Shown: positions 28,356-59,579 of the stretch, one piece after another
Numbering within the stretch: the first letter of the stretch is position 1
Layout of the letters: every line of letters starts with the position of its first letter
From: Octopus sinensis
Lineage: Eukaryota
Reading direction: 5' to 3'
Assembly (NCBI RefSeq): GCF_006345805.1
Contig: NC_043014.1
Span: forward strand, 7,006,001-7,070,000
Length of the DNA stretch: 64,000 nucleotides
Translations under genes and position numbers: made by a program
Notes under the pieces: model-generated
Seen by the model: only the letters and a program-made list of their open reading frames with translations
Told to the model about the DNA's origin: nothing
The model's database searches: none

Positions 28356-28581
28356 TTATTTTGAGATTGGTTTTGGTTTTGGTGGTTTTAATATGCCCTT
28401 AAGTCGAAGGTACTTCACTATAAGTGGGGTTGCACTCAATGTAATGCCTATACGAACTGGAGCGAATACTTTGTGAACGGCATATGCAACGACAAACGTG
28501 CTGGCCCCTGTGGCAAGCCTTGATTTCAAAATGTTTTCACCGATGCCAAGTTTCATCATAAGGCCGACCAGGTCTATTCCA
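28356..28581 (-). CDS. FAM210B: FAM210B-like last exon (C-terminal half of DUF1279)
   Basis: GIDLVGLMMKLGIGENILKSRLATGASTFVVAYAVHKVFAPVRIGITLSATPLIVKYLR closely matches the FAM210B C-terminus as I recall it; tttcag acceptor; TAA at 28356; AATAAA signals on the - strand around 28195-28280. Confidence 0.92.
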
Positions 28582-28632
28582 CTGAAATGGCGAAAGAACG
28601 ACAATAAATATTACATTGACAAAAAATACATA

Positions 28633-28986
28633 TCTCTCTCTATATAAACGGCAGTTTGTCTGTGTGTCTGTTAGCTTGTACCCTCACCCTGACCACGGCT
28701 TTCAACCGATTCTGATGAAACTTGACACACACACATAGCCCAATGTCATAATTCAAAACTAACGTAGAGAAAATTTTGAAAAGTTCCCCCAGTTCTGAAA
28801 AAAATCGATAAATTCGACATAGGGTCGAGAATCAGAAACACAAACCACAGACTGTCTAGGGGACGCAACTCGACCGTTTTAACTCTCAAAAAAAAATTTA
28901 CCATAATTTTTTTTCCATTTTTTTGGCTATAACTCTCTAAAAATGCTTTATAGTTATTTCCCTTACTGCCAGGGCGATACTGCTAG
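28633..28986 (+). mobile_element. Non-autonomous Helitron-like element; related copy at 55808-56207 and a partial one at about 19355-19520
   Basis: 5' TC start; 3' GC-rich hairpin (cccgagcaacgccggg in the 55808 copy) and CTAG-T end; shared internal block. Confidence 0.65.
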
Positions 28987-31672
28987 TTTAATATAATTAT
29001 ACAAACTAAAGGCGGTGCCCCAGCATGGCCGCAGTCAAATGACTGAAACAAGTAAAAAAAAAAAAAAATGAATAACATTTTATATACACACACACACACG
29101 TGTTCACTCTCTCTCTCTCTCTCTCTGGTTGGGTAACCACGTACCTCCTTTTTAGCAAGATACCTGTTTCTGCCTCTCTGTCTCTTACTCTTTACTCTTT
29201 TACTTGTTTCAGTCAGTTGACTGCGGCCATGCTGGAGCACCGCCTTTAGTCGAGCAAATCGACCCCGAGACTTATTCTTTGTAAGCCCAGTACTTATTCT
29301 TTCGGTCTCTTTTGCCGAACCGCTAAGTTACGGGGACGTAAACACACCAGCATCGGTTGTCAAGCAATGCTAGGGGGACAAACACAGACACAGAAACACA
29401 CACACATACATATATATATATACATATATATACGACAGGCTTCTTTCAGTTTCCGTCTACCAGATCCACTCACAAGGCATTGGTCGGCCTGGGGCTATAG
29501 CAGAAGACACTTGCCCAAGATGCCACGCAGTGGGACTGAACCCGGAACCATGTGGTTGGTTAGCAAGCTACTTACCACACAGCCACCTTTCATTATCTGA
29601 CACAAGATCCCCCCCCCCCCCCTTCAAAGCCCACTTCTCTATAGCAAACCGGCAGACATGAGCGGTTGCAGCTTCGGTCAAGCGATGTCTTCAAAGTCTA
29701 ACTAACATTACCAACAAGATGCAAAAACAAATATTATTGTTAGTAGTCATCATGCATAAATGAAGAAGCCTTCCTCTTCTGTTACCTGTTATCGTCTCTC
29801 TCTCTTCCTCCCTTCCTCTCTCTACCCACCTCTCACTCTTTATTTATATAGTATTTCAGTCAGCATATTTTCCAGCCATCTTCAGGTGTTGCATTTTGAT
29901 TTGTTTGAATATCTTGATGCACGCACATAAATACGTACTAAGTCTTGCATGCACACACACACAGATGTATAAATACATACATACACAAATATACACATAT
30001 AGACACACAAATATATATATATATATATATACATACATACACATATACACATATATATACACACACATATATACATATGCACATATACATATATATATGT
30101 ATTCATACATTCATACATATGCATACACACACATATACACCCATATTTATATATTCCCACATGCACATAAATATATATATATACACACACATTCACGCAT
30201 GCATACACATATAAATATACATTCAAACATACAAACATACAGGCATAAATATATATACATTCACAGACACACACACACATATCTGCGTAAGATGTTTCGT
30301 CTGGAGGACAGCACAGTTTATCCAGAATCACCAGAGAATAGCTACATCCTACAACCTGATAATTCTGGACAGATGCAGTTATGCCGTCCAGCAGGTGAAA
30401 CTTTCTGTAAGTAGTAAGCAATGCCTGAAACACAAAATAAAACATCTTGTCTTCAAAGATATAGAATAGTTTTTCAGTTTACAAATAACTTAGCTGAATG
30501 ACTAAGAATATCCAAACAACTTTATTCAAGAGGACAATGACAAATTTTAATGAACAGAAATGACATATAAGAAAATAATCAATTTCAACGAGCAAAAAAC
30601 CACAATTACATTGTTGAACCCAGTGTTTAACTAGTTCCTTATTTCATTGTCCCCACCCACTTAAGGTTGAAAGACTAAGTGAGCCTTGATGGGAGAGAAA
30701 TCAGATTATATAGAGTGACACGACTATCACAAAGTATTTTGGCTGATGTGCTATCAATTCTGCCAATCCATAATGTGATCAAATATCATCATCATCATCA
30801 TTTAACATCTGCTTTCCATGCTAGCATGGGTTGGACGATTTGACTGAGGTCTGGCAAACCTGATGGCTGCACCAGGCTCCAATCTGATCTGGCAGAGTTC
30901 CTACACCTGGATACCTTTCCTAAAGCCAACCACTCCAAGATTGTAGTGGGTGCTTTTACGTGCTACTGGCACGAGGGCCAGTCAGGCAGTACTGGAAATG
31001 GCCATGCTCAAATGGTGCTTTTTACATGCCACCTGCACAGGAGCCAGTCCAGCATCACCGGCAACGACCTTGCTCAAATGTTTTTTCCCGTGCCATGAGC
31101 ACAAGTGCCAGTAAGGTGATGCAGGTAACAATCATGCTCGAATGGTGCTTTTTTACGTGCCACCGGCATGGAAGCCAGTTTGTTGCTCTGGCAACAATGT
31201 GATCAAATAATAACAGTAAAATCGTACAAGGAATTCAAACCATGCATCTGTTTTATACTTGACTGATAACTACACCAATCCTCAGGTATTAGTATGGGGG
31301 TAAATGACTCTGTAGAAGTTAGTGATCTCATAGGACCCTGCACTTTACACAAGTTGAGGACCCATGTCATGAGTACAGGTGGAGGGTTATACCATGATGA
31401 TGGACGACATATTGCACGTCAACCCACACATTATTCACGGATTAAAAAGAATGTGCATTCATTCTTGAAAAATTTGGATTTATAAATCACCAAGCAAATT
31501 TCACAGCCAATTTCCTTCATGTTACCAGGACATAATTAGCTGTTTCTACCAAACCCTAATCTACCCCCACTCACCTACTACTTTTAAGATCTAGGTCAAC
31601 TTCAACTACCGCACCCCCAATCCTTCATTAACCCTTTTGATACGAAACTGCCTGAAACTTTTGAGATATATA

Positions 31673-33215
31673 TTAACCCTTTCGTTACCATATTTCTGTT
31701 GAGATGCTCTGTGTTTCTCTATTATATATATTTTAACCCTTTCGTTACTGAATTTATTTGGAGATGCTCTGTGTTTCTTTCAATTATTTTAAATATAACA
31801 AAGAATTTAGTAAAATAACTTAGTTATCATTAAGCTAGTGATAGGAACATAAATTGTGACTAAGGTTTGGTGGAAGATTTTAATTCAGAACTTTTGAAAA
31901 CAAGACATTTGTACTCAGAGCCAGACCCAGTTTCAGCCAGGTTGGTATCAAAAGGATTAAGAATTGTTTCTCTATTATATATTTTAACCTTTTTGTTACC
32001 ATATTTCTCTTAAGATACTCTGTGTTTCTTTCAATTACTTTAAATATAACAAAGAATTTAGTAAAATAACTTAGTTACCATTAAGCTAGTGTTAGGAACA
32101 TAAATTGTGACTAAGGTTTGGTGGAAGATTTTAATTCAAAACTTTTGAAAACAAGACATTTGTACTCAGAGCCAGACCCAGTTTCAGCCAGGTTGGTATC
32201 AAAAGGATTAAGAATTGTTTCTCTATATATATTTTAACCTTTTTGTTACCATATCTCTTAAGATACTCTGTGTTTCTTCAATTACTTTAAATATAACAAA
32301 GAATTTAGTAAAATAACTTAGTTACCATTAAGCTAGTGTTAGGAACATAAATTGTGACTAAGGTTTGGTGGAAGATTTTAATTCAAAACTTTTGAAAACA
32401 AGACATTTGTACTCAGAGCCAGACCCAGTTTCAGCCAGGTTGGTATCAAAAGGATTAAGAATTGTTTCTCTATTATATATTTTAACCTTTTTGTTACCAT
32501 ATTTCTCTTAAGATACTCTGTGTTTCTTTCAATTACTTTAAATATAACAAAGAATTTAGTAAAATAACTTAGTTACCATTAAGCTAGTGTTAGGAACATA
32601 AATTGTGACTAAGGTTTGGTGGAAGATTTTAATTCAGAACTTTTGAAAACAAGACATTTGTACTCAGAGCCAGACCCAGTTTCAGCCAGGTTGGTATCAA
32701 AAGGATTAAGAATTGTTTCTCTATTATATATATTTTAACCCTTTCGTTACTGAATTTATTTGGAGATGCTCTGTGTTTCTTTCAATTATTTTAAATATAA
32801 CAAAGAATTTAGTAAAATAACTTAGTTATCATTAAGCTAGTGATAGGAACATAAATTGTGACCAACGTTTGGGGAAAGATTTTAATTCAGAACTTTTGAA
32901 AACAAGACATTTGTACTCAGAGCCAGACCCAGTTTCAGCCAGGTTGGTATCAAAAGGATTAAGAATTGTTTCTCTATTATATATATTTTAACCCTTTCGT
33001 TACTGAATTTATTTGGAGATGCTCCGTGTTTCTTTCAATTATTTTTAAATACAACAAAGAATTTAGTAAAATAACTTAGTTACCATTAAGCTAGTGTTAG
33101 GAACATAAATTGTGACTAAGGTTTGGTGGAAGATTTTAATTCAGAACTTATGAAATCAAGTCATTTGAACTCAGAGCTAGAGATGGTTTCAGCCGGATTG
33201 GTAACGAAGGGTTAA
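31673..33215 (+). repeat. Tandem array of about 6 x 250 bp of a piggyBac-like MITE plus linker
   Basis: Units start ttaaccctttcgttac and end ggtaacgaa(a)gggttaa or ggtatcaaaaggattaa; starts at 31733, 31984, 32234, 32482, 32735 and 32988. Confidence 0.9.
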
Positions 33216-33799
33216 TATCTTGCATCAAAGTTTCATATCAGTTTATGTTCTAAACTTCAGCTTAATTAATAATGATGAAGTTATCTTAATTAAATTCTTC
33301 GTTATTTTCAAACGATGGAAACAGAAGCAGTGTAAGTGACTTGTATCACAAATACCTATTTCTTTACTACCCACAAGGGGATAAACACAGAGGGGACAAA
33401 CAAGGACAGACAAACGGATTAAGTCGATTACATCGACTCCAGTGCGTAACTGGTACTTATTTAATCGACCCCCGAAAGGATGAAAGGCAAAGTCGACCTC
33501 GGCGAAATTTGAACTCAGAACGTAACAGCAGACGAAATACCGGTAAGCATTTCGCCTGGCGTGCTAACGATTCTACCAGCTCGCTACCGTGTATCACAAA
33601 CACAACGAGGTGAAGAGATGCAAACTGTCAACCTCTTTGAGTGGTGGACCAGCAGCCGGACAAATTTGAAAACTGAGCTGCATCCGAACTTCATGTAGGG
33701 AACATAAAGAAAAATAAGAAGATGAAAGAAAAGATGAAAAGAGGAAGAGGTACAACAACAACAGCAACAACAACAACGAGAAGGAACAAATAGGGATAC

Positions 33800-34343
33800 C
33801 TGGAGACTGCAAGGTAAAAGCCGCCAAGAGACATGAGGGAGATCGTGATATGGAAAACCATGACAGTGGAACCATACTCTTTGACAGCTCTTTGTAGTTG
33901 TTGTCTGCGGGTTAGTTCGAGAGGGGCTTCGCTGGTACCACGGGCAGTATCTGGGGCTGGAGTTGTGGTTGATGTTTGATGCGTTTCTGTTTTGTTTTCT
34001 GGGGTGATGGGCCCTTTGGAATTTGAGAACCAGTTTGATGTCGAGAATGTCCTCTGTTGTTGTTGTTGCTGCTGCTGATGGTGATGATGATGATGATAAT
34101 GAAGGTGATACTGCAGTTGTTGCGGCCGCAAAGAGACTGTCCTGATTCGGTTTAGCGCCGTCTGCACCTGGCCCTTCAACGCTGGTTCCACTGCTTTCTG
34201 CTCGTCTTTGAAATCTTGGTGATGCTTCTGGTAATTATCTGAAACCGACCGATGCTTGTTCAAAAGGTGCTCTTCAATATCTGAGTGCAGTGCGACAGAC
34301 GTGACAATCTGAGCGATGGCGGCAGAGGTGGTGGTCGTCGTGG
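33800..34343 (-). CDS. FAM210B: FAM210B-like middle exon (His/Gln-rich linker plus the start of DUF1279, RRQQLQRAVKEYGSTVMVFHITISLMSLGGFYLAVS)
   Basis: Acceptor ccgtccctacag (plus-strand ct at 34344-34345); donor AG|gtatcc at 33799; phase 2 joins the last exon as Ser (AG|T). Confidence 0.88.
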
Positions 34344-34889
34344 CTGTAGGGACGGAGATGGACAAAGATGAAGAAGATGATGATGATGATGATGAGGAGG
34401 AGACGAAAGAGACAGACATGGATAGGGGCAGGTGGTGTGATCGTGTGATGAGAACTGTAGTTCAATGATGACAAACTTAAGGTGGGAGATGAGACCTATG
34501 CAAACGACATGTCTGAAGAGGAAGGTGCAGTGAAGAGAAAACGATAAAGTGAGAATGGTAGAAATAAATATTTAAAACTAGTGATTTAGAAATAAGAATT
34601 TCAAAAGTTCTTTTTCCAATCAGGAATATTGATTTTAAATAATAATTTTGTATATATTGATTCTGATTACAGAACCCTAATTGCAAAAATGATAAAAACT
34701 GATAAAAAGATGAATATACATTAAAAATCTTGTCATATTGAAGTTAGCAACTACTTTCTTCTTCTTCTTCTTATTATTATTATTATTATAACCAATGTGG
34801 GTCAGAAGTTGGCTTCCCAAGAACATAGTTTTGGGTGCAAAGTGGACAAGTGATGGAATTTGGTAAATAAAAACTGAAACACACCCACG

Positions 34890-34960
<71 letters not shown>

Positions 34961-34966
<6 letters not shown>

Positions 34967-35488
34967 GTTGTATACTGTCAATCTAACATGAACGTGACAG
35001 TAAGGGGTTACACCACCGCTGTTTGGCCCTAGGAAGCATCAACGCTTCCTGCTGGCTTCGACACATTATTCCTGTGTCCTTATATATTTACGAAGGAGAG
35101 ACAAACACCCCCAGCAGCCAGGCCTGCATCTAGAGACACGCATGTTTCAGGATCTTTGTCCATCACAGGAAAAATGTGTTGAAGCCATCAGGAAGCGTCG
35201 ATGCTTCCTAGGGCTAAACAGCAGTGGTGTAACCCCCTACTGTCATGTTAAGTTGACAGTATACAACCATTCTATCGCCCCACCACCGTACATATCTCTA
35301 TGAGAGATTTAGAAATTTAATATTTCTGATATATATATATATCATCATCATCATCATATATATATATATATATCAGAAATATTAAATAACAAAGGGTTAA
35401 AGTAGAAGGAATAGCTAAGATTTTTTGATTGCTATTTCTAAACTTCGGTATGTGGTGAAGCAAATCTATGCTGAACCCTAATTATAAA

Positions 35489-35546
<58 letters not shown>

Positions 35547-35904: not shown

Positions 35905-35910
<6 letters not shown>
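34961..35910. repeat. Two adjacent copies of a foldback element (34961-35335 and 35538-35910)
   Basis: Each copy has about 110-bp inverted arms (agaatggttgtatactgtcaa...) around the same spacer. Confidence 0.8.
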
Positions 35911-35955
<45 letters not shown>

Positions 35956-35956
<1 letters not shown>

Positions 35957-38429: not shown

Positions 38430-40759
38430 ACTGCAATATATATATATATATACATATATTCATTCGAGGCCACCTATTACAGAGTAGGCGTCAGATCAGA
38501 AAAATACTGACCTACAAAGTTTATCTTTAAAACTGTGCTGGACTCTTTTTTTCCATCAGACACAAGAGGATTTAAGAAAAAAAAAAAATAAATGAAATGA
38601 AAGAAGAAAAATACACAAACAAAAATGTAAAAAATGACAAAGAAAATCAGAAGATGGAAAAAAACAGAGTTAAGAGAAAAAAGATAACAAGAGAGGTGGT
38701 GGGAGTGGGGAAAATTTCCCAAGACAGGTTTAAGATTAACAACGTGATTATTAAGCTGTTTGGAAATAAATTCTTCTCTATCAGTCTTAAGAATTCTTCA
38801 AGAAAGATTATACTCTTTACTCATTTACTTGTTTCAGTCATTTGACTGTGGCCATGCTGGAGCACCGCCTTTTAGTCGAGCAACTCGAACCCCAGGACTT
38901 ATTCTTTGTAAGCCTAGTACTTATTCTATTGGTCTCTTTAGCCGAACTGCTAAGTCACAGGGACGCAAACACACCAACATCGGTTGTCAAGTGTAGTTGG
39001 GTGGACAGACACACAAACACACACACATATATATATATACACACACACATACATATATACACATACATATATACGACAGGCTTCTTTCAGTTTCCGTCTA
39101 CCAAATCCACTCACAAGTCTGTGGTCGGCCAGAGGCTAAAGTAGAAGACACTTGCCCAAGATGCCACGCAGTGGGACTGAACCTGGAACCATGTGGTTGG
39201 TAAACAAGCTACTTACCACGCGGTGCTCCAGCATGGCCACAGCCAAATGACTGAAACAAGTAATAGAGTGAAAGAGTATGTATCTACATGCGTATAGGTG
39301 CAGGAGTGGCTGTGTGGTAAGTAGCTTGCTTACCAACCACATGGTTCCGGGTTCATTCCCACTGCGTGGCACCTTGGGCAAGTGTCTTCTGCTATAGCCT
39401 TGGGCCAACCAAAGCCTTGTGAGTGGATTTGGTAGATGGAAACTGAAAGAAGCCCGTCGTATATATGTATATATATGTATGTGTGTATATCTTTGTGTGT
39501 CTGTGTTTGTCTCCCACCACCATCGCTCGACAACCGATGCTTGTGTGTTTACGTCCCCATAACTTAACGGTTCGGCAAAAGAGACCGATAGAATAAGTAT
39601 CCAAAGAATAAGTCCTGGGGTCGATTGTTCGACTAAAGGTGGTGCTCCAGCATGGCCACAGTCAAATGACTGAAACAAGTAAAAAAAAAAATATATATAT
39701 ATATATATTCTTTTATTCTTTTACTTGTTTCAGACATTTAGCTGCGGCCATGCTGGAGCACAGTCTTTAGTTTCCCCCCCAACATCGCTTGACAACCGAT
39801 GGTGGTGTGTTTACGTCCCCGTCACTTAGCGGTTCGGCAAAAAAGACCGATAGAATAAGTACTAGGTATCCAAAGAATAAGTCCTGGGGTCGATTTGTTC
39901 AACTAAAGGCGGTGCTCCAGCATGGCCACAGTCAAATGACTGAAACAAGTAAAAAATAAATATATATATATATATATATTCTTTTATTCTTTTACTTGTT
40001 TCAGACATTTAGCTGCGGCCATGCTGGAGCACTGTCTTTAGCCCCCCCCCCCAACATCGCTTGACAACCGATGCTGGTGTGTTTACGTCCCCGTCACTTA
40101 GCGGTTCGGCAAAAGAGACCGATAGAATAAGTACTGGGCTTACAAAGAATAAGTCCTGGGAGTCGATTTGCTCGACTAAAGGCGGTGCTCCAGCATGGCC
40201 GCAGTCAAAATGACTGAAACAAGTAAAAGAGAGAAAGAGTAAAGAGAGGAGTGTGCATGTGTATGCGAGTGTCACTACTTGCCTGGACATCATGGAACAG
40301 TTGTAAACGAGTGCCACTGTCATACAAGCAGTGTGTGATTCCATTCATTTCCAATCATTCACGAAGACATGTCTGTCAGGGGGTGGGGTGGGGGTGAATG
40401 TTGGCTTGCTTGGGAACAGATGAGGGTTAGTGACAGGAGAGGCATCCAGCTGTGGAAAATCTGCTGGAACGGACTTCTGCCCAACATCATGCAAGCGTGG
40501 AAAAGTGGACATTAAATGATGATGATGATAAGCAGTGGTAGGGGCGAGGGGGAACGCTAATAAGAGGGGCGAGGGGGAACGTAAGATGTGAGGATGTGCG
40601 TGTGTGCAGGATTGGCAGCGGTGGGAGTAGTGGTAGAAGTGATGGTGGTTGTAGTGGAAGGAGGCTGAACTCATAAAAATGATGAAGTGTTCATGAGGAG
40701 CGGGATGAGGTGAGAGTTTGCCATAAAGGGGAGGGGAACGAAGCAGAGAGAGAAAGGAG

Positions 40760-40766
40760 TAGAAAG

Positions 40767-40803
<37 letters not shown>

Positions 40804-40852
40804 CAGAGAAAGAGGAAAAGAGAGATAAAGAGAGAGAGAGAGAAAGGCAGAG

Positions 40853-40888
<36 letters not shown>

Positions 40889-41068
40889 GAGAGAAGCAGA
40901 GAAAGAGGAAAAGAGAGAGATAGAGAGAGAGAGGGGAGAGGAACAGAGAAAGAGGAAAAGAGAGATAGAGAGAGAGAGAGAGAGAGGAGTAGAGAGAAAA
41001 ATAGAGAGGGAAATAGAATAGAGGAGCAGAGAGAGAGGAGAGGAGCAGAGAAAGAGGAAAAGAGAGAT

Positions 41069-41116
<48 letters not shown>

Positions 41117-41260
41117 AAGACAGAGAGAGAGAAAGAAAGAGAAAGATAGGAGCAGAGAAAGAGGAAAAGAGAGATAGAGAGAGAGAAGTAGAGAAAGACA
41201 GAGAGGGAAATAGAATAGAGGAGCAGAGAGAGAGGAGAGGAGCAGAAAGACAGTCAGAGA

Positions 41261-41324
<64 letters not shown>

Positions 41325-41335
41325 AAGCAGAGTGA
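40760..41335 (+). repeat. Polypurine (GA)n-type composite microsatellite
   Basis: About 570 bp of almost only A and G, with recurring gagcagagaaagaggaaaagagagatag units. Confidence 0.9.
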
Positions 41336-48789: not shown

Positions 48790-49482
48790 GCAGGAGTTTG
48801 TGTGTGTGCGAGTGTGTGTGTGTATGTGTGTGAGTGAGTGTGTGTATGAGTGAGTGTGTGTGTATGTGAGTATAAGTGTGTTAGTGTGTGTGTGAGTATA
48901 AGTGTGTTAGTGTGTGTGTGAGTGAGTGTGTGTGTGTGAGAGTGAGTGTGTGTGCGTGTATGAGTGAGTGTGTGTGTGAGTGTGAGTCTATGAGTGAGTG
49001 TGTGTGTATGAGTGAGTGTGTGTGAGTGAGTGTGTGAGTGTGCATGTATGAGTGAGTGTGTGTGTATGAGTGAGTGTGTGTGTGAGAGTGAGTGTGTGTG
49101 TGAGTGAGTGTGTATGTGTGAGTGTGTGTGTATGAGTGAGTGAGTGTGTGTGAGTGAGTGTGAGTGTGTGTATGAATGAGTGTGTGTGAGTATGAGTGAG
49201 TGAGTGTGTGTGTGTGAGTGAGTGTGTGTATGAATGAGTGTGTGTGAGTATGAGTGAGTGTGTGAGAGTGTGTGTGTGAACGAGTGTGTGTGTATGAGTG
49301 AGTGAGTGTGTGTGAGTGAGTGTGAGTGTGTGTATGAATGAGTGTGTGTGAGTATGAGTGAGTGAGTGTGTGTGTGAGTGAGTGTGTGTATGAATGAGTG
49401 TGTGTGAGTATGAGTGAGTGTGTGAGAGTGTGTGTGTGAACGAGTGTGTGTGTATGAGTGAGTGTGTGTGTGTGTGTGTGTG
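48790..49482 (+). repeat. (GT)n/(GTGA)n composite microsatellite
   Basis: Direct reading of the sequence. Confidence 0.95.
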
Positions 49483-50857
49483 TAGCAGCAACACTATATT
49501 CTTGATATGTAAGCTGTATTGTAATATGGGTCACAATTTTTTTTTTTTGTTATTTGGCTCCAAGTATGGCAGGCTGCATGCCTGGCCGTGAAATGGATGC
49601 AGCGTTTGCTAAGATTTATGGCTGAACTATTGCTTGACAAGATGTTAAAAGGCCCAAAAGTCAAGGTGAAGGGAGTCAGTGCACACAAACCATAGACATA
49701 GTTTTCCCCAATGTTCTGGGGGAAGAGAGAGAAAGAGAGGAAAAGAAGAAGAAAGGGTCACAGTCGGAATTTTTTTGATTATAGATTTTGTTGGATAACG
49801 AATAAAACAAGAACATCCGGAGAGCGCAGACCTCCGCCAAGGCAACACCAACATCCTTGCAATGATTAGTTGGAGATGGTTTTTTAAATGAGAATATCTG
49901 GAATAAACTTGACAGCTTTCACAAATGAGAATACTAAAAATGAACTTGGCCGCTCTCAGAAATTAAGTAAAAAAAAACACAAAAAAAATCCAGAATCCAG
50001 GCGCAGGAGTGGCTGTGTGGTAAGTAGCTTGCTTACCAACCACTCGGTTCCGGGTTCAGTCACACTGCGTGGCACCTTGAGCAAGTGTCTTCTACTATAG
50101 CCTCGGGCCGACCAAAGCCTTGTGAGTGGATTTGGTAGACGGAAACTGAAAGAAGCCTGTCATATATATGTATATATATATATATGCGTGTGTGTTTGTG
50201 TGTCTATGTTTGTCCCCCTAGCATTGCTTGACAACCGATGCTGGTGTGTTTATGTCCCCATTTCTTAGCGGTTCGGCAAAAGAGACCGATAGAATAAGTA
50301 CTGGGCTTACAAAAGAATAAGTCCTGGGGTCGATTTGCTTGATTAAAGGTGGTGCTCCAGCATGGCCACAGTCAACTGACTGAAACAAGTAAAAGAGTAA
50401 AGAGTAATCCTTGTCCGGCACCGGATCGATCCCAAAATCTAATCAGTTCGTGCCAGTCACGAGGCCAAACATCCCTGAAGGTTTCATCCAAATTCATCCA
50501 GAGATTCTGGAGATATTTTGTCCACGGACAAACAAACAAACACGAATGAAAACAATACCGCCGCCTTCGTTAACGTGGAAGTAATTAAAGTGAATAGAAA
50601 TTATTTTCAATGCCTTTGGTTTTCACCAACTTCTTAGCTCTTTGCGTCTTGGATGGTAGAAACCAGAATCGGTAGAATTCTGGACAAAAGGTCTTACATA
50701 AATAGTAACTGTCTAGTAAGAAGTCTGGTTCTCAACCACATGGTTCTGGGTTCAGTCCCACTGTGGAACACCTTGGGCAAGTGACTTCTGCTATAGTTTC
50801 GAGCCAACCAAAGCCTTGTGAGCGGATCTGATAAACAGAAACTGTGTCAAAGCCTGT

Positions 50858-51138: not shown

Positions 51139-51174
<36 letters not shown>

Positions 51175-52824
51175 TACTGTCCCCTTGCTTTGACATTGTG
51201 GGATAATTGTAAGCAAGTCTCACTGTTATACAAGGGGTAGCCTTTATTTCTGATATTCTGTGAAAAACCTGCCTGGTTACAGGGCAGTATTGCCTTATTT
51301 GGAAATTGGCGAAGGGCATCCAACAGTGGAAAATCTGCCTCTATGAATTCCATCTTTTGAATGCAAGCAAGAAAAACCAGACACTGAATGATGATGGTCA
51401 TGATATTCCTCATCATCATTCAGTGTTTTAAATTCTGGTTTTGTCCCCATTAATGGGGTCGGCTGGATCTACCTCAGTGACATAGCAACCGAGGTAGGCA
51501 GGTGCAGCCCACCCCAACCTTTGGGCTGGCTGGTGCTCATTCTCCGTTGCTACCATGAGGCTTTTTTGGAGCTGGATTTTCTACGGGGAGCATGCCCTTG
51601 CTTACCCCCAAGCTCAATTTCTAGACATGAGTGGTTCCAAGACCAAGGCCTCTAGTGCAATTTTTAAGAAATGTGGTGGAAAACTAAGTCAGGAAGGCAG
51701 GGATGCTACTCCCTGAGATCCCTTTCGGAGCCCCACTACCTATCCTAAACAGAAATTCTGACAGGGCCTTGTTTGTGGCTTTCATTTTGCCACTTCTGAC
51801 AGACGATAAAGAACCACTTATAATATTGCAGTCATTTTAATGGATTGTTTCATCCGATAAAATGTGTAGTGTGGTGGCAATGATGTGTAGAAACCTGAAT
51901 ACCAGCAAGTTCCAGTTTGGCTTTTGTCCTTCCGGAAAGAATAACATAAAGTACTAGTCAAGTACTTAACCGTGATATAGTTAACCGGTTCTTTACACTC
52001 CCATAAGATGAAAATATAAATGGTCATGTGCTTATTTTAGAAACGAAATTGTAATTGATTTCAAATTCTGACACAAGGCCAGCAATTTCGGGGTCTTGTT
52101 TTATTGACTCTGAAAGAACGAAAGGCAGAGTTAACCTCAGCAGAATCCAAACTTAGAATATAAAGATTGACAAAATGTTGCTAATTACTTTCCCAGGTGT
52201 GCTAACGATTCTGCCAGCTAGCTACATCATCATCATCATCATCATCATTTAACGTCCGTTGTCCATGCTGGCATGGGTTGGACGGTTTGATTGGGCTGGC
52301 AAGCTGGAAGGCTGCACTAAATTCCAGTCTGATTTGGCATGGTTTTCTATGGCTGGAGGCCTCTCCTAATGTCAACCACTCGGGGGGGGGGGGGGGTAAT
52401 GGGCGCTTTTATGTGCCACTAACACAGGTGCCATTTGTGTGGCACCGGTATCTGCCACGGTTTCGGTTTTGCTCGGTTTGATGGGTCTTCTTCTCAAGCA
52501 TGACATAATACCAAAGGTCTTGGTCATTGCCTCTGTGAGGCTCAACACTCGAAAGGAGCTTGACCACTTTGTCTCCACGAGGCCCAACGCTGTGAGGCCC
52601 GTTCAAAAGGAACTCAGCCACTCTGACTCCATGTGGCCCAGAAGCTCAGCCACTTTGCCTCCATGATGCCCAACGCTTGAAAGGAACTCAGCCTCCTCAT
52701 CTCTGTGAGGCCCAACACTGGAAAAGAATTTGGTCACCTTGCCTCTGTGAGGCCAAACACTCAAAAGGAACTCAACCACTTTATAATATTAATAATGGTT
52801 TCAAATTTTGGCACAAAATGTTGA

Positions 52825-53512
52825 GGTGCTCTGTGTTTCTTTCAATTAATTTTAAATATAACAAAGAATTTAGTAAAATAACTTGGTTATCATTAAGCTA
52901 GTGTTAGGAACATAAATTGTGATTTAGGTTTGGTGGAAGATTTTAATTCAAAACTTATGAAAATAAGACATTTGTACTACAGAACCAGAGGCAGTTTCAG
53001 CCAGGGTTAAGAATTGTTTCTCTATTATATATATTTTAACCCTTTCGTTATTGGATTTCTGTTGAGATGTTCTGTGTTTCTTCCAATTACTTTAAATATA
53101 ACAAAGAATTTAGTAAAATAACTTAGTTATCATTCAACTGGTGTTAGGAACATAAATTGTGACTAAAGTTTGGTGGAAGATTTCAATTCAGAACTTATGA
53201 AAACAAAACATTTGTACAACAGAGCCAGGGGTGGTTTCAACCAGGTTGGTATCAAGAGGGTTAAGAATTGTTTCTCTATTATATATATTTTAACCCTTTT
53301 GTTACCATATTTCTGTTGAGAGGCTCTGTGTTTCTTTCAATTAATTTTAAATATAACAAAGAATTTAGTAAAATAACTTTGTTATCATTAAGCTAGTGTT
53401 AGGAACATAAATTGTGACTAAAGTTTGGTGGAAGATTTTAATCCCAAACTTATGAAAACCAAACATTTGTACTCAGAGCCAGTTTCAGCCAGGTTGGTAA
53501 CGAAAGGGTTAA
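52825..53512 (+). repeat. Second array (about 3 units) of the same piggyBac-like MITE
   Basis: Same body, TTAA-CCC...GGG-TTAA ends and identical linker gaattgtttctctattatatatattt. Confidence 0.85.
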
Positions 53513-53960
53513 ATAATAAACGGCGATATGGCGAGGGATTACTGTACACACTTTTGTTATGGGTTCTAATTCTATCTCAGTTGACTTCATCTTTCATTGT
53601 TCTGGGGTCAATAAAAATATAGGACAAATCAAATAAAGGGGTCGATAAAATTCTCTCTACCATTTCCAACAATATGCTGGCATCCTTGTGCCTATGTTAA
53701 AAATCCTTATTGTGCACTGGTGCTTGTGTTAATGTGCATTCATGCAAAGGCTTGCATATATTTTGTGTGCTTGCGAACATGAGCATGCAGTGTCATTAGC
53801 CTGAGGAGATAGCAGGTGCTTGTCTATGTGTATAAATATTGCTGCAGTTTACATATATATACACATATATATATACATATATATACACACACACACATAT
53901 ATATATATATACACATATATATATACATATATATATACACACACACACATATATATATAT

Positions 53961-54001
<41 letters not shown>

Positions 54002-54076
54002 TATACTAGCGCAGAAAATGGACGTTAAACGATGATGATGATATATACATACATATATATATATATATACACAAAC

Positions 54077-54108
<32 letters not shown>

Positions 54109-54110
54109 GT

Positions 54111-54219
<109 letters not shown>

Positions 54220-56849
54220 GTTGGCATATATTACATGCATGTATACGGTATAAGGTATATCACGTGGTGGATTTTATACAAATGATATCATGTTATTCAT
54301 CCCATCATATTTTAACAACTTCCTTCTTTTATTTAATTAATTAAGGGCATAGAAAAAACAATTAATGAAAATATCATGCAGAGAAGAAAAAGGGTTAAAA
54401 AAAAAGGCATGGAAGAAATAAAAATGGTATTTACCCTAGTTTTTGTACACTTAAAACATATTTAGGGAGCATTTGCATTTACACTTGTGAGAACCAAATA
54501 CTTTTGCCAATGAATTACGTATTTCTTGGAATCTGTTACTTGTGTTTCAGTCACTAAAGTGTGGCCAGGCTGGGGCACCCCCTCATCCTGATTGGCTCCT
54601 GGCTCCTATGCCACCTGACTGGTTTCTGTGCCAGTAGCACGTAAAAAGCGCCCACTACACTCACGGAGTGGTTGGTGTTGTTAAGCAACAAGACGAGTAA
54701 GGGTGACTAGGTGATGGTCTAGGGCTAAGGGGCAGGAGACCCCCAAACCTTGGAAAAAAAAAGAACTTTGGTTGTCTTGTTGTAGTCAAGGGCTGTTCGT
54801 TGAGGCCCGACACCACTGGGAGGTGGCCCTCGAAGTCGCTGGAAATGGAGATCTCCAGGTCCAAATTCTTGAACGGCCCCACTACACTCTCGGAGTGGTT
54901 GGCGTTAGGAAGGGTGTCCAACTGTAGAAACCTTGCCAGATCAGATTGGAGCCTGGTGCAGCCTTCTGGCTTGCCAGTCCTCAGTCAAACCGCCCAACCC
55001 ATGCCAGCATGGAAAACGGACGTTAAACGATGATGATGATGTACTTATTGTATAGGGTCTCTCTTGTCGAACTGCTAAGTTATGGGGAGGTAAATACACC
55101 AACACCAGTTGGGAGACAAACACAGACATAACACACACATTGTGTATGTATATATATATATATATATCATCATCATCATCACCGTCATCATTTAAAGCCC
55201 ATTTTCCACACTGGCATCCTTTCTAGAGAGGACAAACGGATTAAGTCGATTATATCGACCCTAGTGCGTAACTGGTACTTATTTAATCGACCCTGAAAGG
55301 ATGAAAGGCAAAGTCGACTTCAGCGGAATTTGAACTCAGAACGTAAGAGCAGACGAAATACCTATTTCAATTTCTTTACTACCCACAAGGGGCTAAACAC
55401 AGAGAGGACAAACAAGGACAGACATAGGTATTAAGTCGATTATATCGACCCCCAGTGCGTAACTGGTACTTATTTAATCGACCCCGAAAGGATGAAAGGC
55501 AAAGTCGACCTCGGCGGAATTTGAACTCAGAACGTAACGGCAGACGAAATACCGCTGAGCATTTCGCCCGACGTGCTAACGTTTCTGCCAGCTCGCCGCC
55601 TTATAAGTAATTCTGTATAACAACACAAGCATGCCCATCCCTTCGACATTCCCCCCACCCCCACGCCTCCTCCTCATGATGAATTCGTAATGTTTATTTT
55701 TTAAATGAAAATTTCCAGAAATACATTTTCTCTGATGTTGGTTACGACTATGTCGGGGAAAAAAAAAAGTAAATAATATGACTCAAAACGAAGGATACCC
55801 AATAATATCTTTATATATAAAAGAGAAGTTGTGTGTCTGTCTCCTACGATTTAGATTCCTAACTACTCCCACATTTTGCGGTGCAGTTTAACCAAAACCG
55901 GGTATCTTATAGTCGTGATTCATATCCAGCTCTTCTGGGTATTAGCGCGCGTCTACGATGAGTCTACGATTTTAAAAATAATTTAACATCATTTTTTTCC
56001 CATTTTTAATGCATTTTATTCGCTATTATATAAGGGAAGCAACTCTCTAAAAATGTCTACGATGAGTGAACGATTTAAAAAAAAATTTACCATCATTTTT
56101 TCCCCATTTTTAATGCATTTTTTTGCTATTTTTTGGCTATAACTCTCTAAAAATGCTTTATAGTTATTTCCCTTACAAACCCGAGCAACGCCGGGCAACA
56201 CTGCTAGTTTATAATAAAAAGCTTCATATCTTTTTTAAAATTTCGTATAATTCCACCTTACAGTCCGATAGAGAACCACACAGACGGCGGTGGAGGGCGG
56301 GCACACATTTCTGTAATCATGCAAATAATTCGGTCAACTGTTATTGTGAAGTTTTCGAAACTTTGAATTTCCTTTCGATTTTGTTTACAGAAAAATAGAA
56401 GTTAAAGCAGTGAAGCACTGGATTCGTTTTAATTCGCCATTTCCAACCCGACCAAAATCCAGGCCTTGTTAATTGTTATTATAAGGCTAAAATTAATTAA
56501 TACATTAAAATAGGACATCGTACCAAATATTTTGCGATATTTTGGGCGGTTTTTAACGTTCTGAGTTCATATCCTACCGAGGTCGACTTTGCATTTCATT
56601 CTTTCGGGGTCGATAAAGTACCAGTCAAATATTGGGGTCGATGTAATTGACTTGTCCCTTCCGTTCAAAATTGCTGGCACTGTGCCAAAATTAAGAACAA
56701 TTATTATTTTTGCGTTCAGAGTTCAAATGTCACTGAAGTCACCGTTACCTTTCACCCCTTCTAGATCGATACAATAAGTACCATTTGAGTATTGGAATTG
56801 ATATAATGACTATTACCCGATTCCAAAATTTCACACAATGTACCTATTA

Positions 56850-57535
56850 GTACTACTTAAGAATAGTGGTCCGGGTGCGCGCACTCGCACATCCACGCTA
56901 GCTAGTCACGACTAGTCGATCCTTACTTTGTGTTTTATTTACTTCGTTTAAAAAATTAGGATCTTTTCGATTTGAACGGCAGTTTTTTCTAGCGGTGTCA
57001 TATGAAATTGTCACCCATAATTATGACCCTAGTATCGATCTATTGCATTTCAATCTGTTTTAGGGTTAGGGTTAGGGGTGGGGGGAAGGGTATCTTTTTT
57101 TCTTCAGAAATGTAAATAAACCCAATCTGTTTCTTAAACGAGGGACATATTCATATGGCACAGAATGTTCTTTTTTTACCTCAATGGACGTCATTGATTG
57201 GTTGAAATTTCAGAAATTGAAGAAAAACAACAACAAGTATCTTACAAACTATAGAATTTTCTCAATAAAGCCAAGAGAAAATGATGTTTTATAAACACAT
57301 TCTACCAGTATACGAAGTTTAAAAGTGTTTAGTTACCTAGAAATTATTTTTAAAAACTGCCGGTCAAACCGAAAAGATCCACTTTGTATTTTATTTACTT
57401 TGTTAAACAAAATTGATTTATTTTGTGTTTTATTTACTTTGCTAGGTAGACTAGTCGTTGTAGGATCGACTAGTCACGACTAGCTAGCGCGGATGCGCGA
57501 GTGCGCGCACCGGGACCACTGTTCTTAAGTAGTAC
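56850..57535. mobile_element. CpG-rich MITE with a nested second TIR element at about 56957-57380; further copies at 60311-60586 and 62359-62621
   Basis: TIRs gtactacttaagaa..gtggtccgggtgcgcgcactcgc at both ends; the inner element has ggatcttttcg..aacggcagtttt TIRs. Confidence 0.8.
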
Positions 57536-57901
57536 AGTACTTATTAGCAGTGTGACAAAGTTTCTGAAATCTTTTACGAGTTTCAGATCTTTCTACCCGA
57601 CCCCTAGTTTGCAGCAGACGGTTAGCACCCCTCGTTATTTCGTGCTATTTCGAAATCTAACAAGGACAACATTTAATTGTCAGCTCGACCTGTTAGAAAG
57701 AAGAGCCAAAGAGAGCCTCGACATGGTGGGTCGACCTACAAGAAACAGCAGTCAAATCTTTCACATATCACATACCATTCTGTCTTAAATAAAAAAAAAA
57801 GGGACACATTAGATTATGTAATCTTATTCAAATTCCCTAAAATACTAAGATATCTTTAATCATAAGTCTGCTCAATCAAAGCTGACCCGGGACGATGCTA
57901 G

Positions 57902-58286
57902 TAGAGCTTTCCGTCAATTTCCGTAAAAAATTAATTTTTTTTTACATATGGGCTTGCGGGAACTTTTGAAGTATTATACATACATATACACATACACCGA
58001 GTAAAAAACTTCAGTTATCTCTCTCTTTCACACATTACTCTGTCTCTTCACACACACTAACAGAAGCACTTCACTTACACAACATACTGTCTCCCACACC
58101 CCATCAAACACACACACACACACACATGTACATCAATGCTTCCCATGCACGGTAACTTCAAAAGAACTTCCCTCGTCATAAAATCGCTTTCTCTTAGTCT
58201 CTTTCGCTCTCATTACTTCAAAAGTTCCCGCAAGCCCATATGTAAAAAAAAAAGAAGTTTTTTACGGAAATCGACGGAAACGTCTA
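57902..58286. mobile_element. MITE with about 70-bp TIRs
   Basis: 57902-57973 is the reverse complement of 58214-58286. Confidence 0.75.
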
Positions 58287-58501
58287 CGAGAGACGAAAGA
58301 TTGCCAAGTGTTATTTTAGAATTAATTTTTGTTCGTTACATAATTAATCTTAACCGGAAACAAAACTGTGTGGACAATTCGTATATTTTAAAATCGTTCT
58401 ATGACACAAGTTTTAATTCTCGCAGTTAAAATACAAATATACCCGCAAAAAGTGAAGCATATAATTGCTATAAAGCAAAAAGGAAAATAGAATAAATTTA
58501 C

Positions 58502-59579
58502 CCCGGTTCAAAGATGTCTTGCTTTTGATATTTATAGCAGCTTCTTCAATAATTTTCTGTTGTTCATCAAGTACCTGCTGCAGAGTTTTCCGACCGGCCT
58601 TTAAATTCTCCAGCTGTTCTTCACAGTTGGTCAGGCCATACCTGAGGCAGCTCTCCATCCACTGTTGGAAGTAAACGCAATCGTTACCTTGAATTCCTTG
58701 AGGACACGGTGAAACATAGGTGACCTCTGGTTGTGTAGCCACCGAGCTACCGTGGCTAAAATACCTGGTAAAATTGGTATTCTGAAGACTATCTTGCTTA
58801 TTAATACTACTAGCATATACCTGGGAAGCGTTAGAGGGTGCCGAGGCACTGGCTTGAACATGAGACACACTCATATCACTTTCGTCTCCTTTTTCGTATA
58901 CGGTCTGATTTCGGTTGTTGGTATCGAACCCGCTTTGCTCCGTTTCCTGATACTCAATTGAAACTGGTTGGTTTTGTGTTTCCGCTTCGGTTGTTGCATG
59001 GACAGGGACGGCGAATTTAACCGGGTAGGTCTCTTCTCTCTTCTGGTTACTCGGGTGGGTGCTGTGCAAAGCGCCGTACAGAAACTTTTGCTGGCCGCTT
59101 ACTCCCCCACCAGGCATATTATTATGAGTTGGGAACGAAGATCTGTCATTAGGAAAGTAGGGTTTCGGCACGTTAGATTGCATAGCAGAGTGCAGGCTCA
59201 CAACCGGGCCCGAATAGGATGGAAAGCCCATGGTGGAGTCGTTGGCTTGCCCACGGTCGTGCAGTAAACCCTGCCATCTGTTATCGATGTCACGGTTAGC
59301 GAATGGACGTCCTAGCAAGTCGGCCCGATCGGGGGACCCGTGCTTGTTACGGTAGTCGTTCGACCTTTGCCCTCCTTCGACGGGGCCAGTTTTGCCATCG
59401 TTGTCATTCGGTTGGTCGGTCTTCGACGAGAACGATCGAGCTGAGGGCATGAGAGTCCCGAAACCACCCTGATGATGCCCGGACGAGGAAATCAGAGCGG
59501 CAGCAGACTTGGGTGTAATTCGAGACGAGTAATGGCAACAGTTCTGATACTGAAGCACCAAACGGTTCACCTGCAACAT
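58502..59579 (-). CDS. Large first coding exon (359 codons) with a mitochondrial presequence-like N-terminus; probably exon 1 of the FAM210B-like gene
   Basis: Long non-repetitive ORF; accATG at 59579; donor G|gtaaat at 58501; phase 1 matches the 34343 acceptor (G|CC = Ala); the link across the 24-kb intron is inferred. Confidence 0.7.

What the first reader, a model, noticed from the sequence alone, without database searches (positions are those of the whole stretch)
28356..59579. FAM210B-like gene about three times normal length with two presequence-like segments: possible tandem mitochondrial precursor
Seen: exon phases join 59579-58502, 34343-33800 and 28581-28356 into 615 aa, with DUF1279 only in the last roughly 110 aa. 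The N-terminus is basic and Ser-rich and ends ...ARSF|SSK. An internal basic segment, ALNRIRTVSLRPQQ...QRTF|STSNWF, has the same R-x-F|S motif just before the FAM210B-like part. Known: human FAM210B is about 190 aa; R-3 motifs mark MPP/Icp55 processing; tandem precursors split by MPP exist in yeast (Arg5,6 and Atp25). Inference: an unknown mitochondrial protein is fused to FAM210B and may be cleaved into two products.
Basis: partly seen in the sequence, partly recalled or inferred. Interest (0 to 1): 0.7.

Follow-up and report, generated by a model that had tools for sequence, protein, structure and literature searches.

The report
Long invertebrate FAM210B gene, two products
This is an already annotated octopus gene for a mitochondrial FAM210B-type membrane protein whose long N-terminal extension is old and shared across protostomes (molluscs to insects), not a recent fusion; in other molluscs the extension is also made on its own by alternative splicing, while the proposed internal cleavage fits the sequence but is unproven.

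Summary
The three minus-strand exons join through GT/AG sites into 615 aa. That protein is identical to Octopus sinensis XP_029647513.1 (LOC115221468 isoform X1). The FAM210/DUF1279 domain covers only aa 507-594.

The length is not anomalous for invertebrates. Protostome relatives are 340-540 aa and share a conserved N-terminal architecture:
- a presequence;
- a mostly disordered stretch with "module A" (VSLHxxMQSNVP...NMPGGG);
- a small three-helix Cys module "B" (CPQGIQGxDC..W..C..C..GRKTL);
- an R-x-[F/Y]-S-T-S motif about 30-50 aa before the domain.

I found no stand-alone gene for the extension, so a fusion with an independent protein is not supported.

The octopus internal motif (R457-T-F-S) aligns with this conserved motif. 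It matches the R-2/Icp55 rule shown for the internal site of yeast Arg5,6. MPP cleavage is therefore plausible but untested, and the motif is not universal in the family.

New here: mRNA-like contigs from at least five divergent relatives join the extension directly to the last exon. This shifts the frame and gives a stop after 2-3 codons. The O. vulgaris gene model (exon 1 to exon 3, "...SLNRVE*") does the same. So an extension-only product is probably also made by splicing.

Verdict: a new variant of a known kind, of moderate interest.

The parts
58502..59579 (-). Coding exon 1 (aa 1-359 plus the first base of codon 360). The ATG at 59579 is the first start codon after an upstream in-frame stop.
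   Evidence: Identical to the RefSeq protein.
59430..59579 (-). N-terminal presequence-like segment (aa 1-50), with the R48-S-F-S-S motif at 59424-59438. Candidate MPP/Icp55 site RS|F|S.
   Evidence: Acid-free run aa 1-54 with 5 K/R. The motif is kept in O. bimaculoides, O. vulgaris and another octopus; Argonauta has K-H-S-F-S-S.
59040..59207 (-). Module A (about aa 125-180): VSLHSAMQSNVPKPY...THNNMPGGG..QKF...HPS. A conserved linear motif block, predicted disordered.
   Evidence: Conserved in molluscs, an annelid, a nemertean, insects and crustaceans. pLDDT below 50.
58506..58715 (-). Module B (about aa 289-358): CPQGIQGNDC-x9-C-x7-C...GRKTLQQVLDEQ. A small three-helix domain. Octopods have one copy; most other molluscs have two.
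   Evidence: Alignment A4 has invariant Q, G, Q, G, W, C, C, G, L columns. AF2 pLDDT 77-91 in the full-length model and 80 when folded alone. No PDB sequence or fold match. Only a weak partial Pfam match to UBA_N4BP1_C.
33800..34343 (-). Coding exon 2 (aa 360-541): degenerate His/Gln-rich region, internal presequence-like segment, linker, and the first half of the FAM210 domain including its hydrophobic helix.
34000..34185 (-). Internal presequence-like, acid-free segment (aa 413-474).
   Evidence: Only partly conserved in another octopod (P0234).
34036..34053 (-). R457-T-F-S-T-S motif, the candidate internal MPP (R-2) / Icp55 site.
   Evidence: Position read from the sequence. Aligns with R-x-[YF]-S-T-S of relatives. 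Enrichment statistics. Rule taken from PMC8734313.
33800..33903 (-). FAM210/DUF1279 domain, first part (aa 507-541).
   Evidence: Pfam PF06916. AF2 helix 505-540.
28356..28581 (-). Coding exon 3 (aa 541-615 plus stop); the FAM210 domain continues to aa 594 (28422-28581). It is also the acceptor exon of the exon-2-skipping isoform, which reads G|TG GAA TAG = V-E-stop.
59774..59782 (-). GCGCATGCG, an NRF-1-type palindrome about 195 nt upstream of the ATG. It is the only copy in the 64-kb window and a candidate promoter element.
   Evidence: That it is an NRF-1 site rests on the consensus as I remember it.

Best explanation
The locus is the Octopus sinensis gene LOC115221468. It is the octopod member of a protostome-wide long form of the FAM210B-type mitochondrial inner-membrane protein.

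Architecture, from the N-terminus:
- an N-terminal presequence;
- a long, mostly disordered extension carrying conserved module A and the three-helix, Cys-containing module B;
- a conserved R-x-[F/Y]-S-T-S motif;
- a linker of about 45 aa;
- the FAM210/DUF1279 membrane domain.

The extension is ancient and belongs to this gene. It is not a recently fused independent protein.

The gene most likely yields two products by two routes.
1. Seen in mRNA-like contigs of relatives; for octopus known only from an O. vulgaris gene model. Alternative splicing joins the extension directly to the last exon. The frame shifts and stops after 2-3 codons, giving a soluble extension-only protein. In octopus this is exon 1 joined to exon 3, a 361-aa protein ending SLNRVE.
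2. Inferred only. The full-length precursor is imported through its N-terminal presequence and cut by MPP, then trimmed by Icp55, both at R48-S|F|S and at the internal R457-T|F|S. This would release a FAM210B-like membrane protein of about 156 aa, similar in size to mature vertebrate FAM210B, plus a soluble extension fragment of about 400 aa.

Identity and architecture are close to certain. I put the splice isoform in octopus at about 0.6 and internal cleavage at about 0.35-0.4.
For: Identity:
- Exact match to XP_029647513.1.
- Pfam PF06916.

Ancient architecture:
- 89 homologues of 340-613 aa from molluscs, annelids, a nemertean, insects, crustaceans and amphioxus.
- Alignments A1 and A3 show modules A and B and the motif.
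- A profile of the extension finds 292 representatives.
- 74 of 141 listed hits carry the domain; the rest end at exon or isoform boundaries.
- Some relatives are encoded on contigs barely longer than the ORF, so these look like spliced mRNAs carrying extension and domain together: P0023, 413 aa on 1261 nt; P0013, 393 aa on 1356 nt.

Splice isoform:
- L002, L003, L006 and L008 carry the extension ORF followed directly, in a shifted frame, by the last-exon sequence (SGLDVVG.../SGIDLVG...VAYAVHKVFAPVRI). L001 shows the start of the same junction.
- Ten representatives at 50% identity or less end 8-22 aa after the motif.
- Mytilus genomic DNA has TCTGAG|GTTGGT (AG|GT) at exactly that point inside its first coding exon.
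- The corresponding [EQK]-V-[GS] tripeptide occurs in 19 of 52 linkers against 3.6 expected.
- The window's exon 1 plus exon 3 reproduces the C-terminus (SLNRVE, then stop) and the 361-aa length of the O. vulgaris model CAI9737132.

Cleavage:
- Motif enrichment and a constant distance to the domain, median 32 aa.
- In shorter relatives the same motif sits nearer the N-terminus, at about aa 54-112, but 25-45 aa before the domain. In the shortest (rodent, spider, tunicate) it lies at the end of the N-terminal region.
- Human FAM210A is described with an MTS cleaved at Val95, about 95 aa.
- The internal MPP site of Arg5,6 is R-S-Y with Icp55 trimming and needs a strong N-terminal presequence.
- Mature FAM210A has its N-terminus in the intermembrane space. 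Inference: exporting a short N-tail is easier to picture than exporting a 460-aa extension.

Promoter: the only GCGCATGCG in the window is 195 nt upstream of exon 1, and none lies near exon 2.
Against: - No octopus RNA data were available. The octopus exon-skipping isoform rests on one annotation model of unknown evidence type.
- The isoform contigs of relatives could be minor or aberrant transcripts, although a stop in the last exon would escape nonsense-mediated decay.
- The R-x-[FY]-[SCT]-[ST] motif is absent in 176 of 257 family members. These include most short forms (34 of 39) and several module-B proteins.
- In non-octopod molluscs the sequence just upstream of the motif is an acidic helix (EQDxxI...), which is not presequence-like.
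- In another octopod two Arg of the internal segment are Trp.
- No TargetP, MitoFates or iMLP prediction could be run.
- The four conserved Cys of module B would suit the intermembrane space better than the matrix, so the topology is unresolved.
Confidence: 0.5

Rival explanations
1. This is a true tandem (composite) precursor, formed when an independent mitochondrial protein fused to FAM210B. It is imported once and split by MPP into two separately functioning proteins, as with Arg5,6 or Atp25.
For: - Two presequence-like segments with R-x-F-S.
- The conserved internal motif obeys the R-2/Icp55 rule.
- Short FAM210B forms exist in other taxa that correspond to the C-terminal product.
- The extension is also expressed alone as a splice isoform, which suggests it can act on its own.
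Against: - No independent gene for the extension was found among 1.84 billion representatives.
- The extension is mostly disordered.
- The motif is not universal.
- There is no experimental evidence of cleavage.
- Any fusion would have to predate the protostome radiation.
Confidence: 0.25
2. A single uncleaved protein. The full-length 615-aa protein, minus only its N-terminal presequence, is the functional form. The extension is a disordered regulatory or interaction arm. The internal R-x-F-S-T-S motif is a relic of the ancestral presequence end, or an internal MTS-like element that only assists import. The extension-only transcripts are splicing noise.
For: - The motif is lost in many lineages without loss of the gene.
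- The sequence upstream of the motif in other molluscs is acidic and helical, unlike a presequence.
- Internal MTS-like segments that bind Tom70 without being cleaved are known (PMC5881500, seen only as a title and abstract).
- RefSeq lists only full-length isoforms X1 and X2 for O. sinensis.
Against: - The extension-to-last-exon junction recurs in at least five divergent species and in an octopus annotation.
- The embedded AG|GT site is conserved as [EQK]-V-[GS] within an otherwise variable linker.
- The motif's constant distance from the domain and its strong enrichment argue for a function at that boundary.
Confidence: 0.25
3. Annotation artefact. Exon 1 belongs to a separate gene, and the FAM210B part has its own promoter and start near 34.4 kb, for example the in-frame ATG at 34419.
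For: - An in-frame ATG lies 76 nt upstream of the exon 2 acceptor.
- The O. vulgaris annotation gives a 361-aa protein without the FAM210 domain.
Against: - Module B at the end of exon 1 is followed by the FAM210 domain in one polypeptide in dozens of species, including mRNA-sized contigs.
- The ATG at 34419 sits in the pyrimidine/Ser-codon tract before the acceptor. It would give a non-basic N-terminus (MSVSFVSSSS...) and has no counterpart in the ORF of another octopod (P0234).
- The O. vulgaris model still ends inside exon 3 of this same gene.
- The only NRF-1-like element lies upstream of exon 1.
Confidence: 0.04

Closest known systems
Vertebrate FAM210B (C20orf108), and more distantly FAM210A (C18orf19): mitochondrial inner-membrane DUF1279 proteins
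   Same: - The same Pfam domain (PF06916), at about 50-60% identity to fish and rodent FAM210B.
- The protein ends a few residues after the domain, as FAM210B does, with no C-terminal coiled coil.
- An R-x-Y motif lies 25-45 aa upstream of the domain in a rodent FAM210B.
   Different: - 615 aa against about 190 aa.
- A 450-aa N-terminal extension with modules A and B. A profile of these modules gave no significant match in the amphioxus, sea urchin or vertebrate proteins tested.
- An exon-skipping isoform that lacks the domain.
Composite mitochondrial precursors cut internally by MPP: yeast Arg5,6 and Atp25, S. pombe Rsm22-Cox11 and Etp1 (PMC8734313, PMC5063612)
   Same: An N-terminal presequence plus an internal presequence-like stretch ending in R-x-aromatic-S. 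The Arg5,6 internal site is R-S-Y with Icp55 trimming.
   Different: - In those cases both halves are recognisable proteins that exist as separate genes elsewhere, and cleavage has been shown experimentally.
- Here the N-terminal half has no stand-alone homologue and is mostly disordered, and cleavage is untested.
Long-form DUF1279 proteins of other protostomes, annotated only as 'uncharacterized' or 'F210B-like' (e.g. Mya arenaria, Mytilus, Haliotis, Anopheles)
   Same: The same architecture and modules, and the same domain-splitting intron position where checked, in Mytilus.
   Different: - Octopods have lost the second copy of module B and replaced it with a His/Gln-rich degenerate stretch.
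- They have a 24-kb intron after module B that Mytilus lacks.
- Octopod proteins are the longest members found (588-615 aa).

Membership tests
FAM210 / DUF1279 (Pfam PF06916) | Match to the family HMM above the curated cut-off | tested here: met
   85.3 bits against a cut-off of 26, aa 507-594, covering the whole profile 1-88.
FAM210 / DUF1279 (Pfam PF06916) | Helical domain with a hydrophobic membrane helix | tested here: met
   AF2 helices 505-540, 569-579 and 581-602 at pLDDT 78-89. The acid-free hydrophobic run 516-543 has no K/R.
FAM210B rather than FAM210A subgroup | No C-terminal coiled coil after the domain; closest named relatives are FAM210B | tested here: inconclusive
   The protein ends 21 aa after the domain. 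Named vertebrate hits are almost all FAM210B; a few FAM210B-like fish proteins carry FAM210A labels. No tree was built and no verified FAM210A sequence was in hand.
Composite mitochondrial precursor processed internally by MPP (Arg5,6 / Atp25 type) | N-terminal matrix-targeting presequence | tested here: inconclusive
   Composition and the R-S-F-S motif fit. No TargetP or MitoFates was available.
Composite mitochondrial precursor processed internally by MPP (Arg5,6 / Atp25 type) | Internal presequence-like segment with an R-2/R-3 cleavage motif at the junction | tested here: met
   At sequence level only. Acid-free basic run aa 413-474 ending R457-T-F-S. The motif is conserved and enriched.
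Composite mitochondrial precursor processed internally by MPP (Arg5,6 / Atp25 type) | Both halves correspond to proteins that exist as separate genes in other organisms | tested here: not met
   The C-terminal half does: short FAM210B forms exist. The N-terminal half does not: all profile hits belong to FAM210 genes or their fragments and isoforms.
Composite mitochondrial precursor processed internally by MPP (Arg5,6 / Atp25 type) | Demonstrated proteolytic separation inside mitochondria | not testable with these tools
   Needs import assays, westerns or N-terminomics.

The most novel reading that the evidence does not exclude
The N-terminal extension of protostome FAM210B is an undescribed mitochondrial protein module (module A plus a new three-helix Cys domain). 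It would be released from the membrane anchor in two conserved ways: an internal MPP/Icp55 cut at R-x-[F/Y]|S-T-S, and a conserved alternative 5' splice site or exon skip that frameshifts into the last exon. That would make this an animal example of a composite mitochondrial precursor in which splicing controls the ratio of soluble to anchored product.
Probability: 0.25. Interest if true: 0.65.

Novelty: new variant of a known kind. Interest (0 to 1): 0.45.

Why it matters
FAM210A and FAM210B are studied in mammals for roles in mitochondrial translation, cristae remodelling and erythroid iron and haem handling, but their mechanism is unclear.

This work suggests that the protostome version of the gene carries a large conserved extension. 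The extension has its own small folded domain, a conserved candidate processing site, and a recurrent isoform that expresses the extension alone. That points to a partner function that vertebrates have lost or moved elsewhere.

Internal MPP processing has been shown experimentally mainly in fungi (PMC8734313). If the internal cut is real, this family would be a widespread animal example. It could be tested in Drosophila, Anopheles, Mytilus or octopus.

If the cut is not real, this is simply a correctly annotated orthologue with a lineage-expanded disordered N-terminus.

Tried and rejected
- A word-index homology search with exon 1 alone found only octopod proteins. The profile search was needed to reach further.
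- Relic second module-B exon in the 24-kb intron: tblastn found none.
- Stand-alone homologues of the extension: the apparent N-only hits turned out to be intron read-throughs (...FYLAVSR) or the splice isoform.
- Fold and sequence searches for module B and for the whole model against the PDB gave no match. Foldseek E was at least 3 for the full model and gave zero hits for module B. hmmsearch E was at least 0.075.
- Pfam on the extension gave only weak partial hits to UBA_N4BP1_C over about 20 residues, in most of the eight lophotrochozoan relatives scanned, just at threshold in one of them. I did not take this as membership.
- Deuterostome homology of modules A and B was not significant: amphioxus E about 1-2, sea urchin and vertebrates nothing.
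- Isoform X2 of O. sinensis lacks TSAAIAQIVT. I looked for an alternative acceptor or a GT-AG mini-intron and found none, so it is probably an indel polymorphism or a non-canonical event.
- One heterobranch gene model (L005, P0111) also uses an AG|GT site before the domain but joins to an odd acceptor in the 3' end of the last exon. I left it as uncertain.
- A literature search found no paper on invertebrate FAM210.


Full report
**1. The observation**

There is GT immediately after exons 1 and 2 and AG immediately before exons 2 and 3. The ATG at 59579 is the first start codon after an upstream in-frame stop. Pfam finds the FAM210A/B domain (PF06916) only at aa 507-594 (E 4e-24, 85 bits against a cut-off of 26).

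The join is exactly XP_029647513.1, "uncharacterized protein LOC115221468 isoform X1" of Octopus sinensis. So the window is O. sinensis and the model is already in RefSeq. O. bimaculoides (613 aa, 86% identity) and Argonauta hians (588 aa) have the same architecture.

A tblastn of 14 relatives against the window hits these three exons and nothing else. No missed exon was detected in the 24-kb intron.

**2. The length is normal for this branch of the family**

A search with the whole protein returned 89 homologues. They come from gastropods, bivalves, an annelid, a nemertean, many insects, crustaceans and amphioxus, and are mostly 340-540 aa. All carry PF06916 at the C-terminal end except two truncated entries (P0003, P0046).

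The alignments show a conserved order:
- a basic N-terminus;
- short QG[IV]QG motifs;
- "module A" (VSLHxxMQSNVPxPY...HLNMPGGG...KY...HxS), present from molluscs to insects and crustaceans;
- "module B" (CPQG[IV]QGDDCxxFKLWxENCxRYGLxNCxxQL...GRKTLxxVFxEQ), two copies in most molluscs and one in octopods, at the end of exon 1;
- a motif Q-[KR]-R-x-[YF]-S-T-S;
- a variable linker of 20-50 aa;
- the FAM210 domain.

In octopods the second module-B copy is replaced by a degenerate His/Gln-rich stretch, but the motif (QRTFSTS) is kept and aligns with RSYSTS of the others.

AlphaFold2 with 76 homologues gives confident structure only for module B (three helices, aa 300-358, pLDDT 77-91) and for the FAM210 domain (aa 505-602). 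Everything else is below pLDDT 50, including module A and the internal basic segment. Module B folded alone gives pLDDT 80. It has no sequence or fold relative in the PDB. Its only Pfam signal is a weak 20-residue match to the N4BP1 UBA-like domain.

**3. Is the extension a fused independent protein?**

I built a profile of the extension only (alignment A2) and searched 1.84 billion cluster representatives. There were 292 hits at E of 0.001 or better.

Of the 141 newly listed hits, 74 contain the start of the FAM210 domain. Many of those break off at "...FYLAVSR", which is read-through into the intron that splits the domain. Most of the domain-less hits look like shorter fragments. Ten end 8-22 aa after the R-x-Y-S-T motif. 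None is a convincing separate gene.

The modules are significant in lophotrochozoans and arthropods. They are not significant in amphioxus, sea urchin or vertebrate proteins. So the extension is at least protostome-old and tied to this gene. A recent or octopus-specific fusion is excluded. An ancient fusion cannot be tested.

**4. The ten "short" hits are a splice isoform**

I fetched the contigs behind six of them; all are 1.0-1.9 kb.

In L002, L003, L006 and L008 the extension ORF ends "...QEWP*", "...PKWA*", "...KEWN*" and "...KERD*". The sequence then continues in another frame with SGLDVVGLLTK...VAYAVHKVFAPVRI... or its equivalent, which is the last exon of the gene. L001 shows the first 22 nt of the same junction (...SERD*, with SGIDMVSILKS in the shifted frame). 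L007 ends at its stop.

What is missing is the segment that encodes the linker and the first, membrane-spanning half of the domain.

In Mytilus galloprovincialis genomic DNA the whole extension, linker and first half of the domain form one coding exon (aa 1-403), followed by a 2.9-kb intron and the last exon. At the point where the short isoforms diverge, the exon reads TCT GAG|GTT GGT (S-E-V-G). This is an embedded AG|GT.

The tripeptide [EQK]-V-[GS] recurs at that point of the otherwise unconserved linker in 19 of 52 module-B proteins, against 3.6 expected from shuffles (maximum 9). That fits a conserved alternative 5' splice site.

Because the new stop lies in the last exon, such mRNAs should escape nonsense-mediated decay. 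This last point is established knowledge, not tested here.

The octopus analogue is exon-2 skipping. Joining the window's exon 1 to exon 3 gives "...SLNR-V-E-stop" and 361 aa. This reproduces the C-terminus and length of the O. vulgaris annotated protein CAI9737132 (P0091). I could not see what evidence that model rests on, and no octopus transcript contig was available.

**5. The internal R-x-F|S site**

In octopus the two longest acid-free stretches outside the domain are:
- aa 1-54 (5 K/R, contains R48-S-F-S-S);
- aa 413-474 (6 K/R, 8 His, contains R457-T-F-S-T-S).

Across 257 family members with at least 40 residues before the domain, the strict motif R-x-[FY]-[SCT]-[ST] lies 10-75 aa upstream of the domain in 81. 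The expected number is 2.6 (maximum 7 in 200 shuffles). A looser version occurs in 119 against 10 expected. The median distance to the domain is 32 aa.

In several shorter relatives the same motif sits nearer the N-terminus but at the same distance from the domain. In the three shortest it ends the N-terminal region:
- rodent FAM210B, RGYC at about aa 54;
- spider, RRYSS at aa 57;
- tunicate, KCYST at about aa 58;
- an oyster short form, RQFSS at about aa 99;
- Drosophila serrata, RSYST at about aa 112.

The literature describes human FAM210A as having a targeting signal cleaved at Val95, and a mouse construct lacking the signal starts at residue 96.

The yeast Arg5,6 study shows that MPP cuts internally at R-S-Y (R-2 with an aromatic at +1), that Icp55 then trims one residue, that the site lies in an internal presequence-like region, and that a strong N-terminal presequence is required. 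The octopus site fits all sequence-level requirements.

A topological argument is inference only. Mature FAM210A has its N-terminus in the intermembrane space and its C-terminus in the matrix. Exporting a short N-tail after matrix processing is easier to picture than exporting a 460-aa extension.

Evidence against cleavage:
- The motif is missing in most family members, including 34 of 39 short forms and several module-B proteins.
- In non-octopod molluscs the residues just upstream form the acidic last helix of module B.
- In another octopod two of the Arg in the internal segment are Trp (P0234).
- No predictor or experiment was available.

**6. Promoter and the "own start for exon 2" rival**

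The only GCGCATGCG in the 64-kb window lies about 195 nt upstream of the exon 1 ATG, and none lies near exon 2. I recognise this as an NRF-1-type palindrome, typical of nuclear genes for mitochondrial proteins, from the consensus as I remember it.

The in-frame ATG at 34419 lies in the pyrimidine-rich tract before the acceptor. It would give a non-basic N-terminus, and it is not matched in the ORF of another octopod. RefSeq isoforms X1 and X2 both start in exon 1.

**7. Conclusion**

The fusion story is not.

This is the octopod member of an old, undescribed long form of FAM210B. One route to a separate N-terminal product, alternative splicing into the last exon with a frameshift, is seen in mRNA-like contigs of several relatives and is mirrored by an octopus gene model. 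The other route, internal MPP/Icp55 cleavage at the conserved R-x-[F/Y]-S-T-S, is consistent with the sequence and conserved in many lineages, but it is neither universal nor tested.

Novelty: a new variant of a known kind. Interest is moderate.

Noticed in passing
window 59774-59782 (and CACGTG about 40 nt further upstream): A single NRF-1-type palindrome GCGCATGCG about 195 nt upstream of the exon 1 ATG. It is the only copy in the window. A CACGTG E-box lies nearby. This is probably the core promoter of the gene.
   Followed up: partly
window about 34303-34332 (inside exon 2): RefSeq isoform X2 (605 aa) and O. bimaculoides lack the 10 residues TSAAIAQIVT. The 30 nt have no GT-AG boundaries, so this looks like an indel polymorphism or a non-canonical event rather than ordinary alternative splicing.
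   Followed up: partly
window 34344-34419: The exon 2 reading frame stays open upstream of the acceptor to an ATG at 34419, through a TCn (Ser-codon) repeat. It has no counterpart in the ORF of another octopod and is not presequence-like.
   Followed up: partly
L004 (Mytilus galloprovincialis) about 4051-4062; L001-L003, L006, L008: A conserved AG|GT embedded in the coding exon (read as [EQK]-V-[GS]) marks an alternative donor. It joins the extension to the last exon with a frameshift, and the stop arises from the I/L-D codons of the conserved SGID motif.
   Followed up: yes
L005 (heterobranch genome GCA_021962125.1) 11173-11180 and about 12020: In this species the gene has at least six coding exons. 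An annotated model (P0111) uses ACAG|GTCAGC just before the domain and joins to an acceptor at the very end of the last exon, skipping the whole FAM210 domain. Its reliability is unknown.
   Followed up: partly
window 7645-8130 (+): A 161-aa ORF rich in PPxY-type motifs (PPPYSEV, PPTYEQA, PPPPPYSS) and poly-Q, with no Pfam hit. It may be an exon of a neighbouring gene.
   Followed up: partly
window 11382-11993 (-): An ORF with weak C2H2 zinc-finger-like matches, flanked by TA/CA-rich simple sequence. It may be a fragment of a mobile element or a pseudogene.
   Followed up: partly
window 21268-23522, 13592-14452, 31712-33203, 52819-53559, 40745-41325, 48799-49483: Large tandem arrays and microsatellites: 174 nt x 13, 216 nt x 4, (AG)n and (TG)n. 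A unit of about 251-255 nt occurs in both introns of the gene. SINE-like ORF fragments (…LPNPLTRHWSARGYSRRHLPK…) recur throughout.
   Followed up: no
P0246, P0239, P0255 (oysters): Oysters have a 245-268-aa DUF1279 protein without modules A or B but with R-Q-F-S-S or R-S-F-A-T before the domain. It is either a second paralogue or a secondarily shortened form. The pearl oyster Pinctada keeps the long form.
   Followed up: no
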